Below, piece after piece: positions 35,817 through 52,849 of a DNA stretch of 64,000 bases. Within the stretch, counting starts at the first letter, position 1; the number at the start of each line of letters is the position of its first letter. The notes under the pieces were generated by a model. That model did no database searches, was not told where the DNA came from, and worked only from the letters and a program-made list of their open reading frames with translations. The position numbers and the translations under genes were made by a program. Location of the stretch: positions 186,001 through 250,000 of IMG/VR virus record IMGVR_UViG_3300028558_000016; one strand, 5' to 3'.

Positions 35817-36235
35817 AGAGATACAGCGATTTCGTTAACGTCAACGAAAAAGTCGAACAATACGATTTTGAATTCCACACAGTAGTGGTTGCAAAGAACA
35901 TTGATTTCGATAATGAGCCTGTGGACAATTCTAAGGAACAATACATTGAAAAAGGAGATTTAACCATCCATTGGATAATGGATTTCGATAATAGAAAATA
36001 CGGAATCAATAGTATGGCGCCTGTGATCAAAAAGATCTCAGGATTTTATACTTTGGTCACTCCACAAGAACAAGGCAGAGATATTGAAGATGAAGTGGAA
36101 ATTCTAATGGATGAAAAATCTGATTGGAAATTCGAGAATGATTTTCAAAGCGAATTCAAATTCGGTTACTCAATTGTTCCAGGAAGCATAGAGATAGATT
36201 TCAAAGACAAGACAATCAAAATACTTTATTATTGA
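35807..36235 (+). CDS. CTS-leader protein MGIKRYSDFVNVNE
   Basis: ATG 35807; leader variant. Confidence 0.65.
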   Translation: MGIKRYSDFVNVNEKVEQYDFEFHTVVVAKNIDFDNEPVDNSKEQYIEKGDLTIHWIMDFDNRKYGINSMAPVIKKISGFYTLVTPQEQGRDIEDEVEILMDEKSDWKFENDFQSEFKFGYSIVPGSIEIDFKDKTIKILYY

Positions 36236-37194
36236 AGCATTTCCATTGCAAGTCTCGCACCAGGTATGTGAGATGTCATTGCCATGAATGCGTACAGTGC
36301 TAAAGCAAGAGTAAAGTATTGCAACACTGCCAATAATATTTGACGCAAAGTCATTATTGGTTTTTCCACCGGCTTTTCCGGTTTCCTTAAATTCGTTTTT
36401 GTTTCAGTTAGATATTTTGCTAATTCAGCAGGAATTGGAACATTTTTATCCGTATAATCTTTTTCTATCGATGCAATGTGATTCAATATTGAATAGTATT
36501 CGTTATTGAGTATCTCATCATATTTGTTTTTTCTCTTCAACAGCCAAAATTCGAGCAACAATTCTATGGTTGATAGAATGACAACGAGAATAAAAATCCA
36601 AATGTGCGCATACACTGCGAGAAATATTGCACCCACAATTCCGAGGCACATGAAGATCAATCCAACCCAAGAGTGAATAGAGAATGCAATTGATTTCATT
36701 ATACGACCACCATCAAGAGGATTTATTGGAAGAAGGTTAAAAAGATTTATCATTGCCATCCAGCTTGCTCCAGCAGCATACATTGGATTTTCCGTGACAT
36801 AGAATATAATCATCATTCCAAGCGCACAGGCAAATCCAAACACAGGTCCCATTATGGCAACAAACACTTCGTCATTCCTTGTTTTAAAGTCTTCTGACGC
36901 AACAGCCGCTCCACCCACAAATGGAATGAAATAGATTCCCTTGGTTTTTATGCCAACACGTTTCATGGCCCAAATATGACCATACTCATGGATTAAAAGT
37001 TGTACCATTAATATAAGAGAGAACTTCCATGAATACATGTAACTGTATGCGGCAAAAGATATTCCAGCCAATGCAAGCTTGGTCATCTTTGCTGATATTG
37101 AAGTCACCTTTGTTATTACTTTAAGAGATAAGATAGCGATATTCGTCATCTTACTACCAAACGATTTTGGTTTTTCTGTTGTCATTTCTGCCAT
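36229..37194 (-). CDS. Site-2 (M50 family) intramembrane zinc protease
   Basis: HEYGH, FIPFVGG, AIMGP, NLLPINPLDGGR; start MAEMTTEK at 37194. Confidence 0.9.
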   Translation of the reverse strand: MAEMTTEKPKSFGSKMTNIAILSLKVITKVTSISAKMTKLALAGISFAAYSYMYSWKFSLILMVQLLIHEYGHIWAMKRVGIKTKGIYFIPFVGGAAVASEDFKTRNDEVFVAIMGPVFGFACALGMMIIFYVTENPMYAAGASWMAMINLFNLLPINPLDGGRIMKSIAFSIHSWVGLIFMCLGIVGAIFLAVYAHIWIFILVVILSTIELLLEFWLLKRKNKYDEILNNEYYSILNHIASIEKDYTDKNVPIPAELAKYLTETKTNLRKPEKPVEKPIMTLRQILLAVLQYFTLALALYAFMAMTSHIPGARLAMEMLQ

Positions 37195-37198
37195 GCTA

Positions 37199-37206
37199 CA
37201 AATATA
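37199..37206 (-). promoter_or_regulatory. Bacteroidota sigma-ABfr -7 element TATATTTG
   Basis: Exact TAnnTTTG, 4 nt upstream of the M50 ATG (near-leaderless). Confidence 0.55.
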
Positions 37207-37296
37207 CTTAAAACTTTTAATATCTAACGAATACAACTATTGAGAATTTTTGTAGATTTGTTTGAGTATATAGATACTGATAGTTCTTTGATTTAT

Positions 37297-37696
37297 GGGA
37301 CCGAACGGTTTTGACAGTAATCCCTTAGTGGGTAAGCACGTCGTGCCTTGTATGTGTAGCACGTTAAAGCAAACATTCACAATTTTGTAAACGGCAACGT
37401 AATTACAAACGAAGTTGGCTCAAAAGCTGACGTATTAGCAGTTTTAAAAACAGTTAAGGCTAAGCCTTCTGTTGCTCAAGTTGAAGAACTTGAGATTGCT
37501 TAATACCCTACGGGTTCACCGCAAACTCTTCAAACCTGAGAAAAGCATAAGACGCTAAGGTACAATCCGCGTGAATGCAAAGTTGATCTCGAACTCATCG
37601 AGGTTTAGTTTGAGGAATTATAAAAATTCCATCTAAACGTGTAGAAAATCTATTATTGTTTTTATTTGGACCCGGGTTCGAATCCCGGCGGTTCCA
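37297..37696 (+). ncRNA. ssrA: tmRNA
   Basis: Acceptor stem GGGACCG/CGGUUCC with G3-U wobble; GUUUUGAC D-region; T-arm CCGGG-UUCGAAU-CCCGG; discriminator A; internal tag ORF. Confidence 0.92.
37393..37503 (+). CDS. tmRNA tag frame GNVITNEVGSKADVLAVLKTVKAKPSVAQVEELEIA*
   Basis: UAAAC directly before a GGC resume codon; 36 codons then TAA. Confidence 0.7.
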   Translation, partial: GNVITNEVGSKADVLAVLKTVKAKPSVAQVEELEIA

Positions 37697-37699
37697 CTG

Positions 37700-46690: not shown

Positions 46691-48196
46691 ATGTCGTCAA
46701 CCGCAGAAAAAACAAAGAAAAAAAACGACGAAGCCAAGGAAATCATCAACGACGTGTTGAAAAATGGCAAAGTTAAGAAGGACTTCTCTAAAGCAGAAGT
46801 AACGAGAGGAGAAACCAGCAAAATCATCCTGCCTGAAGGCATGCCGTTGGAAACAGCAGCAGAGTGGATCAAGCGTCAAATAATCATGGAAGAGAAAGTT
46901 GTTACTTTCCACCAGGGTTTGAGAGCTTATCCTCTTGATGGGGCTTACGCGCTTTACCGTGCGATTGTCGACATCTTCGGATATGTTGATCTTGCGAAAG
47001 AAGAAGGGCCTTCAAGCTCAACTCCTCCGCACATGATCGGAATTAAGTTACCGGATGGAAGTAGCATTCAGGTTCCTTGGGGTCGCATGCAGTTCCCTGG
47101 TCTTGACAAGGAATCTTTCTTGGAGACTAAATACAACAACCAAAAAATGGAATTCGAGATCCACGGACAATTCCGTAAAAAATTCGAGCCGGTTGTTGCG
47201 CGTATCGCAGACAGGACAATGGAAATCCTTCGCGACGAGTCGATCTACAAAGGACAAGCAATTAAGGTTGACCTTGCCTGGATCGCTAACAACGAATTTC
47301 CTTCGGATCCTAAGTTCTTAAAGGACATCATGAACATTAAGGATGAAGATGTTCTTATGAACGAAGCAACAAAATCAAACTACGGAACATCCGTATTGTT
47401 GCGTATCCAACGCTCTAAACTTTGCATTAAGAAAGGCATTCCATTGAAACATGGTTGCTTACTTGCTGGACCTTACGGTACCGGTAAAACCTTAACTGCA
47501 AAATGGACAGCTAAGAAAGCAGTTGAGAACAACTGGACTTTCATTTACCTTGAAGATTGCCGTCAGATGAAAGATGCTTTGCGCCTTGCAGAAATGTACG
47601 CGCCAGCAGTTGTGTTCGCTGAAGACATCGACAAAGCAATGGAAGGTGGACGTAGCACTCAGATGAATGAGATCTTAAATACCTTGGACGGTATCGATAC
47701 TAAATCGAATCCAATCATCACCATCCTAACAACCAATCACATCGACAATATCAACCCGGCGTTTTTACGTGCAGGTCGTATTGACAGCCTCATCCAAATG
47801 AGAGCTCTTGATGTGGAAATGGCTGCTCAATTCATTAAGAATTTTGGAAAAAATTCTGATGGAGAAAGCGTGTTAGCTGACGATGACTACTCAAAAGCAG
47901 CACAAGCATTAACCGGAATTGTTCCTGCCTTCGCAAGCGAGGTAATGAACAAAGCGAAAATGAATGCTCTTTACAGAGGTGGAGAAGAAGAGAAAATCAA
48001 CAACGAAGACATCGTTGCGGCAGCTCTTTCATTCAAGGAACACATCGCCTTCACTGAGGGTGCTGTTGAGAAATCACCATTGGAGAAACTTGGTAGCGCA
48101 GCAGCGACATACTGGGATCTTGTGGTACAATCAAAGAACCTTGCTGACACTGTGAATTCAACAAAAGCCGCGGCTCCTGTAGCTAAAGGCAAATAA
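46691..48196 (+). CDS. AAA+ ATPase
   Basis: GPYGTGKT, VFAEDID, TTNH, RAGRID. Confidence 0.9.
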   Translation: MSSTAEKTKKKNDEAKEIINDVLKNGKVKKDFSKAEVTRGETSKIILPEGMPLETAAEWIKRQIIMEEKVVTFHQGLRAYPLDGAYALYRAIVDIFGYVDLAKEEGPSSSTPPHMIGIKLPDGSSIQVPWGRMQFPGLDKESFLETKYNNQKMEFEIHGQFRKKFEPVVARIADRTMEILRDESIYKGQAIKVDLAWIANNEFPSDPKFLKDIMNIKDEDVLMNEATKSNYGTSVLLRIQRSKLCIKKGIPLKHGCLLAGPYGTGKTLTAKWTAKKAVENNWTFIYLEDCRQMKDALRLAEMYAPAVVFAEDIDKAMEGGRSTQMNEILNTLDGIDTKSNPIITILTTNHIDNINPAFLRAGRIDSLIQMRALDVEMAAQFIKNFGKNSDGESVLADDDYSKAAQALTGIVPAFASEVMNKAKMNALYRGGEEEKINNEDIVAAALSFKEHIAFTEGAVEKSPLEKLGSAAATYWDLVVQSKNLADTVNSTKAAAPVAKGK

Positions 48197-50440: not shown

Positions 50441-51085
50441 ATGGGAAATGACGTTTGGGGAGGAAAACCCGGCATGGAAGCCGAGGATAAAAAATCTGTA
50501 ACTACGCCAATAGTAAGCGCAGGAAGCAGTGATAGAGTAGATTCACTTGGATCTAAAATTTTCTTTTATTCTTCGGTTGTCGAAGATAAAATTCTTGATC
50601 TCAATAAACACTTGCATGAAATATCTGGAAAGATGGCTGCAAGAAATTTTGAAAATTCTTTAGGCGACAATGCTTTAATTACAACACCCATAATGTTGCA
50701 CATTAAATCTTATGGTGGTTCAGTGTTCGCAGGACTTGCTGCAATGGATACAATCATTGATATTAAAAAGAGAGTTCCAGTTTACACAATTGTAGAAGGA
50801 TGTGCAGCAAGCGCAGGAACTTTTCTTTCTTGTGTTGGTACAAAAAGATACATGCGCAAACATGCATGGCTGTTAATTCACCAATTGAGTTCTGGCTTCT
50901 GGGGAAAATACAGCGAGATAAAGGATGAAGTAGAAAATCTCGATCGTTTAATGGAAACAATCAAGAAGATTTACAAGGAGAATACAAAGGTTCCTATGAA
51001 GGAACTTGATGGCATTCTTAAAAGAGACATTTGGTGGGATGCGCAGACTTGTTTGAAGTATGGATTAATAGATGAAATAATTTAA
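50441..51085 (+). CDS. clpP: ClpP-like serine protease
   Basis: SYGGSV, AASAGT, LIHQLS, RDIWWDAQTCLKYGLIDEI. Confidence 0.85.
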   Translation: MGNDVWGGKPGMEAEDKKSVTTPIVSAGSSDRVDSLGSKIFFYSSVVEDKILDLNKHLHEISGKMAARNFENSLGDNALITTPIMLHIKSYGGSVFAGLAAMDTIIDIKKRVPVYTIVEGCAASAGTFLSCVGTKRYMRKHAWLLIHQLSSGFWGKYSEIKDEVENLDRLMETIKKIYKENTKVPMKELDGILKRDIWWDAQTCLKYGLIDEII

Positions 51086-51086
51086 T

Positions 51087-51389
51087 ATGGAAGAAAAAGA
51101 ATTGATAATACTCACACATTATGTGAATGTTGGGAGTTCATCTCCAGAAACAGCAAAGCGTATAATGGAAAGAACCGTAGAAATGGTTTTGAGCGAGGAT
51201 ACAGATCCATTGTATAGATTTAAACATTTTTTCTATCCTGTGAAAGATGAAGTCAATGCAAGAACAGAATGCATCTATCCTGTAAGACAAGGTCCAATGG
51301 GAATTCCTGGAGTTCCTGGAGATTATTTTGAATCGATTTTGAAAGACCTTGATAATAAGTACGAACAGCTTTTAGAAAAAATAGGATGA
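51087..51389 (+). CDS. Hypothetical protein
   Basis: ORF. Confidence 0.6.
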   Translation: MEEKELIILTHYVNVGSSSPETAKRIMERTVEMVLSEDTDPLYRFKHFFYPVKDEVNARTECIYPVRQGPMGIPGVPGDYFESILKDLDNKYEQLLEKIG

Positions 51390-52849
51390 TACTCGATATA
51401 GAAAAAAGACCTCACGAACTTGCATGCAGTTACTTCAATAAAGAAGGAACAATTGAATATGTAAGAATTCCAGTTCCATTGAACGAAAGATTCAATTGGT
51501 TAACTTGTAATGACACGGATAAGGACAAGGACGTAGAATGGAAAACGTGGGACGAAAATCCTGTAAAGAAGATAATCGTAAAAGATGCAACTAAACTTTC
51601 TAAGTATAGATGTGAAGAGGTTATTTATCAACATACACAAGCAAATCCCGACTCTCCGTTATTGGAGTTTAATGTTCCAAGAAAGTATTTCATAGATATT
51701 GAGGTTGAGGTTCTTGATGGATTTCCAGATCCTGACACAGCACAAAATAAAATAACTGCAATATCAATCGCAGGCGCTGATAGCAAAAGGATTTTTGTTC
51801 TTGGTCTTAAACCATTAACAGAAGCGCAATGTCACAAGATCGATGCCGACATCAACGGGCACTTTGCCAAGTTCGATGATAAATGGAATTTCCAATACAA
51901 GCAGTTTGATTCTGAGCATGACATGTTGGTTGAATTCTTTCAGAAGATATTACCTAACATGCCTTGCATAAGTGGATGGAATTTTTTCGGATACGATTGG
52001 AAGTACCTTCTTAACAGAGCTTACAAATACAAGGATGTAAAACCAGAGAGATGTTCTCCGTCGAATACTTTAATAACAAAAAGAAATTCCGGTAATTCAG
52101 GAATTCCACAACATAAGCTTATTGTGGATTACATGGAAATTTACAAGAAGTGGGATAAGGTTATCAAGGTAAGAGAAAACGATAAGCTTGATTATGTTGC
52201 CAAGATGGCAACAGGATTGGAGAAAATTAAATATCCAGGAAGCTTCACAGAGCTTTATGAAAGAGATTTTCAAAAGTTTATCTTCTATAACGCGGTCGAT
52301 TCAATTCTGGTTCATTACATCGATAAGAAGCTAAACACAATGTTGGCTTATCTTAAATTGGCACATGTTTCAGGAATAGAAATAAAGAAAGCATTCTCTC
52401 CTATTTGGATCATGGAAGCAATGATGAACAGAAAATTCCTTGACAGAAAACAAGTATTCGTTTATTTGGGTGGAGATGAAGAAGATCAAAAACCATTTGA
52501 TGGTGCGTATGTAAAAGAACCTTTGAGAGGATTTCACAATTGGGTTACATGTTATGACTTTGCATCTTTGTATCCTAATACCATGATGCAATTCAACATC
52601 AGTCCAGAAACATTTGTTGGAAATAACGTTGAGCCTAAAGAAGGTCAGATCAAGGCCGGTGAGCACGTCAATGAATTTGGAAAAACATCTTGGAGAGTTT
52701 TCGATAACAGCTCTGACTCCATAATGAGAGTAATTTTAACAGAGCTTTATGGAAAGAGAAAAGAAACGAAACAAAAGTACCTCTCTATTAATAAAGAGAT
52801 CGACGCTCTCAGCAAGTACATTTCAAAAGAACGATTAGAGAAAGCCTAA
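51386..52849 (+). CDS. Family B DNA polymerase, N-terminal half (gp43A-like: exonuclease + region II)
   Basis: FIDIE, GWNFFGYDW, YNAVDS, YDFASLYP, NISPET; ends after the first fingers helix, with no KxxxNSxYG or YxDTDS. Confidence 0.9.
   Translation: MILDIEKRPHELACSYFNKEGTIEYVRIPVPLNERFNWLTCNDTDKDKDVEWKTWDENPVKKIIVKDATKLSKYRCEEVIYQHTQANPDSPLLEFNVPRKYFIDIEVEVLDGFPDPDTAQNKITAISIAGADSKRIFVLGLKPLTEAQCHKIDADINGHFAKFDDKWNFQYKQFDSEHDMLVEFFQKILPNMPCISGWNFFGYDWKYLLNRAYKYKDVKPERCSPSNTLITKRNSGNSGIPQHKLIVDYMEIYKKWDKVIKVRENDKLDYVAKMATGLEKIKYPGSFTELYERDFQKFIFYNAVDSILVHYIDKKLNTMLAYLKLAHVSGIEIKKAFSPIWIMEAMMNRKFLDRKQVFVYLGGDEEDQKPFDGAYVKEPLRGFHNWVTCYDFASLYPNTMMQFNISPETFVGNNVEPKEGQIKAGEHVNEFGKTSWRVFDNSSDSIMRVILTELYGKRKETKQKYLSINKEIDALSKYISKERLEKA

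What the first reader, a model, noticed from the sequence alone, without database searches (positions are those of the whole stretch)
37297..37696. Phage tmRNA with an unusually long 36-aa tag that does not end in the usual Ala-Ala
Seen: alanine-identity acceptor stem and a tag frame GNVITNEVGSKADVLAVLKTVKAKPSVAQVEELEIA. Established: most bacterial tags are about 10 aa and end in hydrophobic-AA, read by ClpXP. Inference: the phage rescues stalled ribosomes but reroutes or spares the tagged proteins, possibly via its own ClpP (50441) or AAA ATPase (46691), forming an orthogonal rescue and degradation circuit.
Basis: partly seen in the sequence, partly recalled or inferred. Interest (0 to 1): 0.65.

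Follow-up and report, generated by a model that had tools for sequence, protein, structure and literature searches.

The report
Huge-phage tmRNA with long conserved tag
A 482-kb soil phage carries its own ribosome-rescue RNA (tmRNA) and partner protein SmpB, and the peptide tag the RNA encodes is four times longer than in its likely hosts, ends differently, and is conserved in related phages, so these phages probably mark unfinished proteins in their own way.

Summary
Window 37297-37699 (+) is a full tmRNA (Rfam RF00023, 101 bits), which ARAGORN misses. It has a 7-bp acceptor stem with G3:U70, a T arm, pseudoknot PK1 and a Gly (GGC) resume codon at 37393. That codon opens a 36-codon frame ending Ile-Ala-UAA.

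I found five more homologues, in two other huge phages (374 and 508 kb) and three shorter contigs. All have 34-36-codon tags. Substitutions favour third codon positions, indels are whole codons, and the other two frames are closed, so the long tag is selected as a peptide. A hairpin inside the ORF adds RNA-level constraint on the "QVEELE" codons.

All three large genomes also encode SmpB. Its nearest bacterial relatives are Bacteroidota (Cytophagales), whose tags are 8-10 aa and end in AA (35 of 35 sampled).

- The ClpP-like gene has an intact catalytic triad, and all three phages have a ClpP.
- The AAA protein at 46691 lacks pore loop 1 and has no orthologue in the relatives.
- None of the three phages encodes Lon.

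Phage tmRNAs are known, and so is a long phage tag that does not end in AA (Bxz1). This is a new variant of a known kind. What happens to tagged proteins is untested.

The parts
37297..37699 (+). tmRNA gene (ssrA). The mature RNA probably runs 37297-37696 plus an added CCA, because the DNA reads A-CUG after the acceptor stem.
   Evidence: RF00023 at 101.1 bits, full length 1-374. Five homologues found elsewhere.
37297..37303 (+). Acceptor stem, 5' strand (GGGACCG); G3 of the G3:U70 alanine identity pair.
   Evidence: 7 of 7 pairs in all six family members. G3:U70 is invariant, and positions 4-6 show compensatory changes.
37342..37379 (+). Pseudoknot PK1. Stem 1 is 37342-46 with 37359-63; stem 2 is 37349-55 with 37373-79 (one U-U mismatch).
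   Evidence: Read from the sequence and from the Rfam structure line. Stem 1 covaries across members: CGUGC/GCACG, CGUGUU/AACACG, AUCGC/GCGAU, AUCGG/CCGAU.
37388..37392 (+). Frame-setting motif UAAAC just 5' of the resume codon.
   Evidence: UA[A/G]A[C/U] stands at -5 to -1 in all six members. From my own knowledge, this is the same spacing as E. coli U85-A86 before GCA.
37393..37503 (+). Tag reading frame: resume codon GGC (Gly), 36 codons, then stop TAA at 37501-37503.
   Evidence: Rfam alignment. Peptide-level conservation, whole-codon indels and third-position bias. Differences in close relatives seen in RNA libraries are synonymous.
37475..37494 (+). 8-bp hairpin inside the ORF (CUCAAGUU, loop GAAG, AACUUGAG), covering the Q-V-E-E-L-E codons.
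   Evidence: RNAfold predicts it in all six members. L124 keeps it through compensatory change (ACUCAG/CUGAGU). Synonymous sites here do not vary among the five members that share the QVEELE codons.
37672..37695 (+). T arm (stem 37672-76 with 37684-88, loop UUCGAAU) and acceptor 3' strand 37689-95. The discriminator A is at 37696.
   Evidence: 5 of 5 T-stem pairs in all members, with compensatory changes.
50441..51085 (+). ClpP-like protease. Examined as a possible partner; not shown to belong to the system.
   Evidence: PF00574 at 109 bits. The Ser/His/Asp triad aligns to the ClpP structure 1y7o; the N-terminal 40-80 residues are diverged. 35% identical to the ClpP of G001.
46691..48196 (+). 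AAA ATPase. Examined as a possible partner; the evidence is against it.
   Evidence: Nearest structures are VAT/Cdc48 D2 domains. Pore loop 1 is deleted. No orthologue in G001 or G002.
36229..37236 (-). M50 (site-2 type) metallopeptidase gene, transcribed divergently from the tmRNA gene. A neighbour only.
   Evidence: PF02163 at 71 bits. It also lies beside the tmRNA in G001 and L022, but not in G002/L020 or L124.

Best explanation
This is a working phage copy of the bacterial trans-translation system. It consists of a one-piece tmRNA of Bacteroidota type in the window and a phage SmpB at genome position 127,890-128,306, outside the window.

Inferred sequence of events:
1. The transcript is trimmed and receives a CCA end.
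2. Host AlaRS charges it with alanine through G3:U70.
3. Phage SmpB carries it to ribosomes stalled on broken or stop-less mRNA in the infected cell.
4. Translation resumes at GGC and ends at UAA, releasing the ribosome.
5. The released protein carries Ala plus 36 phage-specified residues.

The tag is conserved as a peptide in at least six related phage sequences and has nothing in common with the host-type ...YA[LM]AA ending. I therefore infer that it is read by something other than the usual ClpX-type reader of the Ala-Ala end. Most likely it is a multi-part degron or handle, as in the long Lon-specific Mycoplasma tags, with a conserved N-terminal GN(V)ITNEVG block, a central D-[VI]-L-x-V block and a hydrophobic-Ala C-terminus.

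Shown here: the RNA's identity, the reading frame, selection on the peptide, the SmpB partner and the contrast with host tags. Inferred: charging, rescue activity, and any fate of the tagged proteins.
For: - Full-length tmRNA match; homologues at 87, 84 and 83 bits.
- Perfect acceptor and T stems with compensatory changes and an invariant G3:U70 in six members.
- PK1 covaries, and the UA[AG]A[CU] motif stands before a Gly codon in all six.
- The frame is open for 34-36 codons in all six, and the other frames are closed. Indels are whole codons. Substitutions by codon position are 17/9/29 outside the region used for searching (p = 0.004).
- G001 was found through a neighbouring gene, and L124 through an N-terminal/middle pattern, so the conservation of their C-termini is not built in by the search.
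- RNA-library contigs from three soil studies are about 95% identical over 185-233 nt inside the tmRNA. Their tag differences are synonymous (4 of 4 in two runs; 1 synonymous plus S26A in the third).
- SmpB is present in all three large genomes at 165-178 bits, with its C-terminal tail intact.
- The nearest bacterial SmpBs are Bacteroidota at 50-56% identity. Tags in that lineage are 8-10 aa and end in AA in 35 of 35.
- No bacterial species-representative genome carries the C-terminal tag motif.
Against: - There is no direct evidence of charging, tagging or proteolysis.
- The RNA evidence comes from assembled contigs of relatives. It gives no ends or strand, and DNA carry-over is not excluded.
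- Part of the C-terminal conservation is RNA-level: the in-ORF hairpin fixes even synonymous sites.
- Three of the five relatives were found with patterns taken from the tag, which biases those stretches.
- No candidate reader of the tag was identified: no Lon, no conserved Clp-type ATPase, and no tag look-alike in the phage genome, Pfam or the ESM Atlas.
- The host is inferred only from SmpB and tmRNA similarity.
Confidence: 0.6

Rival explanations
1. Rescue without destruction. The phage tmRNA frees ribosomes, but its tag is deliberately not a degron, so truncated (mostly phage) proteins are spared and host ClpXP is not loaded.
For: The tag lacks the Ala-Ala end found in all 35 sampled tags of the host lineage. 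No phage Lon and no conserved Clp ATPase.
Against: A tag that only needs to avoid recognition has no reason to be 34-36 codons long or to be held constant as a peptide, with mostly synonymous changes in the N-terminal block and among close relatives. The last two residues remain hydrophobic-Ala in all six members.
Confidence: 0.2
2. The tag is a private degron fed to the phage's own protease: ClpP at 50441 working with the AAA ATPase at 46691 or another phage unfoldase.
For: A ClpP with an intact triad in the window, and a ClpP in all three huge phages. The tag is unlike host tags.
Against: The AAA at 46691 lacks pore loop 1 and has no orthologue in G001 or G002. A Clp-type AAA_2 domain is strong only in G002, weak in G000 and absent in G001. 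The window's ClpP is only 35% identical to that of G001, and its N-terminus is diverged. Nothing ties ClpP to the tag.
Confidence: 0.12
3. The long frame is kept for RNA reasons only (spacing, hairpin, SmpB or S1 binding). The peptide sequence itself does not matter.
For: The QVEELE codons form a conserved hairpin whose synonymous sites are frozen, and L124 changes the amino acids there while keeping the hairpin.
Against: Outside the hairpin, changes concentrate at third positions (17/9/29) and amino acids are retained. Close relatives differ only synonymously. Indels are multiples of three.
Confidence: 0.05
4. A different resume codon gives a short tag: either GCA at 37394 (Ala-Thr-stop) or a later in-frame GCA, as ARAGORN chose for L020 (16 aa).
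For: GCA ACG TAA is present one base downstream in the window and in L020. ARAGORN's call on L020.
Against: The +1 frame has no early stop in G001, L022, L023 or L124. The later GCA is not conserved and lies 54 nt further from PK1. The Rfam alignment, the -5 to -1 motif and the mostly synonymous changes in the first ten codons all point to GGC.
Confidence: 0.03

Closest known systems
Bacteroidota one-piece tmRNA (tags such as GNTQYAMAA, GNNSYAMAA, GEYNYAMAA)
   Same: Same layout of the 5' end, helix 2 and PK1. Gly (GGC) resume codon followed by Asn or Glu. The phage SmpB is 50-56% identical to Cytophagales SmpB.
   Different: The tag frame is 34-36 codons rather than 8-10, and there is no Y-A-[LM]-A-A end. 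The hairpin lies inside the ORF. CCA is not encoded. ARAGORN fails to detect it.
Mycobacteriophage Bxz1 tmRNA (tmRNA Website; Hudson et al. 2014, PMC4131195)
   Same: A phage-borne full tmRNA whose predicted tag is long (25 aa) and does not end in Ala-Ala (...AAALV).
   Different: No sequence similarity in the tag. A different host phylum and a 156-kb genome. The Bxz1 record was not searched for SmpB here. The present tag is 9-11 codons longer, and I show here that it is conserved as a peptide across diverged phages.
Bacillus phage G tmRNA (498-kb phage; PMC4131195)
   Same: A huge phage with its own tmRNA. The tag ends hydrophobic-Ala (QVA) and contains N-I-T-N-x-E, reminiscent of G-N-I-T-N-E.
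   Different: The tag is 13 aa. No SmpB was found in phage G. No detectable nucleotide similarity. The shared short motif may be chance.
Mycoplasma / Mesoplasma extended ssrA tags read by Lon (Gur & Sauer 2008; Ge & Karzai 2009, cited in PMC3985003)
   Same: Long tags whose end departs from ALAA (AFA) and which were retargeted to another protease through several contact regions. This is the best functional analogy.
   Different: These are bacterial, not phage. About 27 aa by my recollection (not checked here). Lon is absent from the three phage genomes. No homology was tested.
tmRNA and SmpB reported in huge phages (Al-Shayeb et al. 2020, PMC7162821) and in 2.3% of isolate phages (Buchholz et al. 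2022, PMC9004378)
   Same: The same kind of translation-related cargo in very large phage genomes.
   Different: Those surveys used ARAGORN, which misses this family or mis-reads its tag. The passages I read do not analyse the tag peptides.

Membership tests
tmRNA (Rfam RF00023, one-piece) | Covariance-model match above the gathering score, over the full length | tested here: met
   101.1 bits against a cut-off of 47, model positions 1-374.
tmRNA (Rfam RF00023, one-piece) | tRNA-like domain: 7-bp acceptor stem formed by the two ends, plus a T arm | tested here: met
   12 of 12 pairs in each of six members, with compensatory changes.
tmRNA (Rfam RF00023, one-piece) | Alanine identity: G3:U70 and discriminator A | tested here: met
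   Both are invariant in all six members.
tmRNA (Rfam RF00023, one-piece) | Pseudoknot PK1 a short distance 5' of the resume codon | tested here: met
   PK1 at 37342-37379, 13 nt before GGC. Stem 1 covaries.
tmRNA (Rfam RF00023, one-piece) | Short internal reading frame without a start codon, ending in a stop | tested here: met
   The frame runs 37393-37503 and ends in TAA. It is conserved, but 34-36 codons long, well beyond the 8-10 of the likely host phylum.
tmRNA (Rfam RF00023, one-piece) | Tag ending in hydrophobic-Ala-Ala (ClpX-type degron) | tested here: not met
   The ends are E-I-A, E-F-A, E-L-A or L-V-A. This is typical of the family but not defining: Mycoplasma and Bxz1 also depart from it (PMC3985003).
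tmRNA (Rfam RF00023, one-piece) | 3' CCA end | tested here: inconclusive
   Only A-C is encoded, followed by UG, UU, CC or AA in the different members. CCA would have to be added. The reads available were contigs and show no ends.
tmRNA (Rfam RF00023, one-piece) | Alanylation and trans-translation activity | not testable with these tools
   Needs biochemistry or mass spectrometry.
tmRNA-SmpB system | Cognate SmpB encoded in the same genome | tested here: met
   PF01668 at 177.5 bits in G000, 165.4 in G001 and 178.2 in G002. The basic C-terminal tail is present.
ClpXP/ClpAP-type tag proteolysis encoded by the phage | ClpP with a catalytic triad, plus an unfoldase with pore loops, both conserved along with the tag | tested here: not met
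   The ClpP triad is present. The window's AAA lacks pore loop 1 and is not conserved. AAA_2 is not conserved.

The most novel reading that the evidence does not exclude
These huge soil phages run a private tagging code. The conserved 37-residue tag is read by a dedicated, still unidentified phage factor (an adaptor, a protease, or a sorting or sequestering partner). Products of ribosome rescue in the infected cell would then be handled separately from the host's ssrA pathway, making this a naturally orthogonal tag-reader pair.
Probability: 0.18. Interest if true: 0.8.

Novelty: new variant of a known kind. Interest (0 to 1): 0.55.

Why it matters
Phage tmRNAs are usually listed as cargo and not examined further. 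Here the tag, the part that decides what happens to rescued proteins, has been rebuilt and then kept under peptide-level selection across phages whose SmpB proteins are only 45-48% identical. That makes the question "why does a phage bring its own tmRNA?" directly testable:
- One diagnostic tryptic junction peptide for proteomics.
- One reporter-stability assay.
- One pull-down.

If the tag has its own reader, it would also be a natural orthogonal degradation or handling tag, of the kind the Mesoplasma Lon tag has become for synthetic biology.

There is a practical point too. ARAGORN-based surveys miss this family or mis-call its tag, so phage tmRNAs with unusual tags are probably under-counted.

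Tried and rejected
- ARAGORN at default and relaxed thresholds found nothing, or only spurious "permuted" calls at -ps70.
- blastn of the tmRNA against 50,697 phage records: no match.
- Two exact or near-exact patterns from the 3' domain in viral contigs found only G001.
- The tag peptide is too short to use as a related-loci query.
- L024 and L125 were chance pattern matches without a tmRNA.
- Alternative resume codons are rejected; see the rival explanations.
- M50 peptidase as a conserved partner: adjacency holds in one subclade only.
- Genome-wide TAG recoding as context: rejected. The genome reads well under code 11.
- Tag as an amphipathic helix: the hydrophobic moment is no higher than in shuffled sequence.
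- Tag as a mimic of a phage protein tail or of a known domain: no meaningful match in the phage genome, Pfam or the ESM Atlas.
- TAnnTTTG promoter motif: present upstream in only 3 of 6 members.
- Two papers on Mycoplasma tags were not held in the library.

Tools deliberately not used:
- The big protein searches, at the operators' request; no claim here needed them.
- Structure and complex prediction, because I do not claim any specific binding pair.

Full report
**What is there**

Rfam's tmRNA model matches window 37297-37699 on the + strand over its whole length (101.1 bits, E 2.6e-38). ARAGORN reports no tmRNA in the window. Run locally with relaxed thresholds, it gives only two spurious "permuted" calls at -ps70.

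The sequence shows the expected parts:
- A 7-bp acceptor stem, GGGACCG with CGGUUCC, carrying the alanine identity pair G3:U70 and discriminator A at 37696.
- A T arm (stem 37672-76 with 37684-88).
- An H-type pseudoknot, PK1, at 37342-37379.
- A single-stranded stretch ending UAAAC.
- The codon GGC at 37393, which the Rfam alignment places on the model's resume codon.

Because the tmRNA itself donates an alanine, the appended tag would be 37 residues. After the discriminator the DNA reads CUG, so CCA is not encoded and must be added.

**The genome**

The window is positions 186,001-250,000 of a 482,156-bp virus record that CheckV rates as complete. It is 36.8% G+C and has 55 tRNA genes. It has a large terminase (77 bits), and three short conserved rRNA motifs find no match. 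Several rhizosphere metagenomes hold the stretch.

The phage also encodes SmpB, the obligatory protein partner of tmRNA, at genome 127,890-128,306 (177.5 bits). SmpB sits beside a tRNA cluster, just downstream of a gene whose C-terminus I read by eye, without any test, as resembling an aminoacyl-tRNA synthetase.

**A family with a conserved long tag**

Searching with the neighbouring M50 peptidase gene found a 373,759-bp phage, G001, with a tmRNA next to its M50 gene (86.7 bits). This route is independent of the tag sequence.

A degenerate pattern from the tag's C-terminus then found three more:
- a 507,910-bp phage (G002, locus L020, 83.6 bits);
- a 2.8-kb metagenome contig (L022, 83.2 bits);
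- a 1.3-kb contig (L023), whose divergent T loop keeps it under Rfam's cut-off.

A pattern from the N-terminal and middle part of the tag, which puts no constraint on the C-terminus, found L124 and the near-identical L126.

The tags are:

| Member | Tag | Length |
|---|---|---|
| window | GNVITNEVGSKADVLAVLKTVKAKPSVAQVEELEIA | 36 |
| G001 | GNITNEVGGLADVLAVEKATKAQPVAAQVEELEFA | 35 |
| L022 | GNITNEVGGYADVLAVVKATKAQPVAAQVEELEFA | 35 |
| L020 | GNVITNEVGSLSDILSVLAKSKTTATQVEELEIA | 34 |
| L023 | GEIKNEVGSKADVLGVLKAMKSQTVASQVEELELA | 35 |
| L124 | GNITNEVGSRADVLAVINAQSKTVATQVEAELVA | 34 |

**The RNA fold is supported by covariation**

- All six members pair 7 of 7 in the acceptor stem and 5 of 5 in the T stem.
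- Acceptor positions 4-6 change in a compensatory way (A-U/C-G/C-G, G-C/A-U/A-U, U-A/C-G/U-A), while G3:U70 never varies.
- PK1 stem 1 covaries.
- Positions -5 to -1 before the Gly codon read UA[A/G]A[C/U] in all six. From my own knowledge, this matches the spacing of U85-A86 before the E. coli resume codon, the nucleotides that set the frame.

**The frame is translated as written**

- Only this frame is open in all six; both others contain stops in every member.
- All indels are whole codons.
- In the first 27 codons, which none of my patterns covered completely, the minimum number of changes by codon position is 17, 9 and 29 (chi-square p = 0.004).
- In the first ten codons, the window and G001 differ by four synonymous third-position changes and one replacement.
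- The alternative GCA one base downstream would give Ala-Thr-stop in the window and L020, but has no early stop in the other four.
- ARAGORN's choice of a later GCA in L020 (a 16-aa tag) is not conserved and lies 54 nt further from PK1.

**Part of the conservation is RNA-level**

The codons for (A)QVEELE form a perfect 8-bp hairpin at 37475-37494. Its synonymous sites do not vary among the five members that share it. L124 changes the amino acids to QVEAEL while restoring the pairing (ACUCAG/CUGAGU). So the "QVEELE" block should not be read purely as a peptide motif. The last two residues, hydrophobic then Ala, lie outside the hairpin and are kept in all six.

**RNA libraries**

Contigs from three soil metatranscriptome studies (281, 323 and 242 nt) lie inside the tmRNA, between 37323 and 37555, at about 95% identity. 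They diverge in the variable pseudoknot region beyond that.

Their differences inside the tag:
- In two runs: TTA to CTT (Leu), AAA to AAG (Lys) and GTT to GTA (Val).
- In the third run: TTA to CTA (Leu) plus Ser26 to Ala.

This is what purifying selection on the peptide predicts, and it suggests that close relatives are present in RNA pools. However, these are assembled contigs: they show no ends or strand, and DNA carry-over cannot be excluded.

**Origin and contrast with the likely host**

The three phage SmpBs are 45-48% identical to one another. Their nearest bacterial relatives, at 50-56%, are almost all Bacteroidota, led by soil and freshwater Cytophagales such as Dyadobacter, Telluribacter, Siphonobacter and Spirosoma.

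The tmRNAs of five such genomes share the phage RNA's 5' and PK1 layout and the GGC resume codon followed by Asn or Glu. Their tags are GNTQYAMAA, GNNSYAMAA, GEYNYAMAA, GESTYAMAA and EASYAMAA. Thirty further tmRNAs sampled from that phylum have tags of 8-10 residues, all ending in Ala-Ala. No species-representative bacterial genome contains the phage tag's C-terminal coding pattern.

The phage tmRNA therefore looks like a Bacteroidota tmRNA whose reading frame was expanded about four-fold and whose canonical end was replaced.

**The proposed degradation partners**

- **ClpP-like protein (50441-51085):** it keeps Ser, His and Asp in alignment with a solved ClpP, but its first 40-80 residues are diverged. 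All three phages have a ClpP; the window's scores 110.7 bits against 252 and 229 for the others, and it is 35% identical to that of G001.
- **AAA protein (46691-48196):** it is closest to the D2 domains of VAT and Cdc48. However, it has an 11-residue deletion exactly where VAT has pore loop 1 (..KWVG..). Its Walker B reads A-E-D. It has no orthologue in G001 or G002.
- **Lon:** absent from all three phages.
- **Clp-type AAA_2 domain:** strong only in G002.
- **M50 peptidase:** next to the tmRNA in only one subclade.
- **Tag look-alikes:** the tag resembles nothing else in the phage genome, Pfam or the ESM Atlas, and it is not amphipathic beyond chance.

So no reader of the tag can be named.

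**What is known already**

- Phage tmRNAs are established: Bacillus phage G and the Bxz1-type mycobacteriophages (PMC4131195).
- tmRNA and SmpB occur among the translation genes of huge phages (PMC7162821).
- tmRNAs are found in 2.3% of isolate phages (PMC9004378).
- Run here, ARAGORN gives Bxz1 a 25-residue tag ending ...AAALV and phage G a 13-residue tag ending QVA. Phage G has no SmpB.
- The ALAA end is conserved among bacteria except in Mycoplasma, where it is AFA and the tag is read by Lon (PMC3985003).
- A full-text search found no paper containing this tag's motifs.

**Verdict**

This is a member of a family of huge-phage tmRNAs, each paired with a phage SmpB where the whole genome is available. 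Their 34-36-codon tags are conserved as peptides and are unlike the tags of the probable host phylum.

Phage-owned ribosome rescue is well supported by sequence. A separate fate for the tagged proteins is a reasonable inference from the selection on the tag, but it is untested.

Noticed in passing
Genome (outside the window): 358020-358092 (-), 368276-368349 (+), 374278-374351 (+): Three tRNA genes with a CUA (amber-reading) anticodon, in a genome that otherwise reads as standard code 11. ORFs of 100 aa or more cover 77-100% of every 20-kb bin, and TAG ends only 7% of long ORFs. Suppressor tRNAs would make ribosomes read through host TAG stops and run to mRNA ends, which could raise the demand for tmRNA rescue. 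That link is speculation.
   Followed up: partly
Genome 127,890-128,306 (+), locus L009:1498-1920: Phage SmpB gene. It lies just downstream of a gene whose C-terminus looks, by eye and untested, like an aminoacyl-tRNA synthetase, and about 2 kb from a tRNA cluster (123.7-125.9 kb). This part of the rescue system lies outside the window.
   Followed up: yes
window 46691-48196 (+): Cdc48/VAT-like AAA protein with a 200-residue N-terminal region of unknown kind, pore loop 1 deleted, and Walker B reading A-E-D. What such an ATPase does in a phage is unclear.
   Followed up: partly
window 51386-52849 (+): A family B DNA polymerase ORF that holds the exonuclease domain but only about the first 120 positions of the polymerase domain profile. 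The gene may be split or interrupted.
   Followed up: no
window 37209-37296, and the 90 nt upstream of the tmRNA in L010, L022, L020, L023 and L124: AAACTTT, a spacer of roughly 17-19 nt (judged by eye), then a TATATA-like box recurs upstream of the tmRNA in G001, L022, L020 and L124, and more weakly in L023 and the window. This could be a shared phage promoter. L023 and L124 also have clear hairpin-plus-U-run terminators just after the tmRNA; the scan found no terminator-like site downstream of the tmRNA in the window.
   Followed up: partly
window 36229-37236 (-): An M50 (site-2 protease type) membrane metallopeptidase, transcribed divergently from the tmRNA gene. It is also next to the tmRNA in G001 and L022, but not in G002 or L124.
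   Followed up: yes
L020 / G002 (IMGVR_UViG_3300049793_000366): IMG/VR labels this 508-kb relative a provirus. It is also the only one of the three phages with a strong Clp-type AAA_2 ATPase (a 712-aa ORF at 443,494-444,018).
   Followed up: no
window 37297-37699, and L010, L022, L023: ARAGORN fails on four of the six family members and mis-places the resume codon in L020 (L124 was not run). Surveys of phage tmRNAs that rely on ARAGORN probably under-count tmRNAs with long tags.
   Followed up: yes
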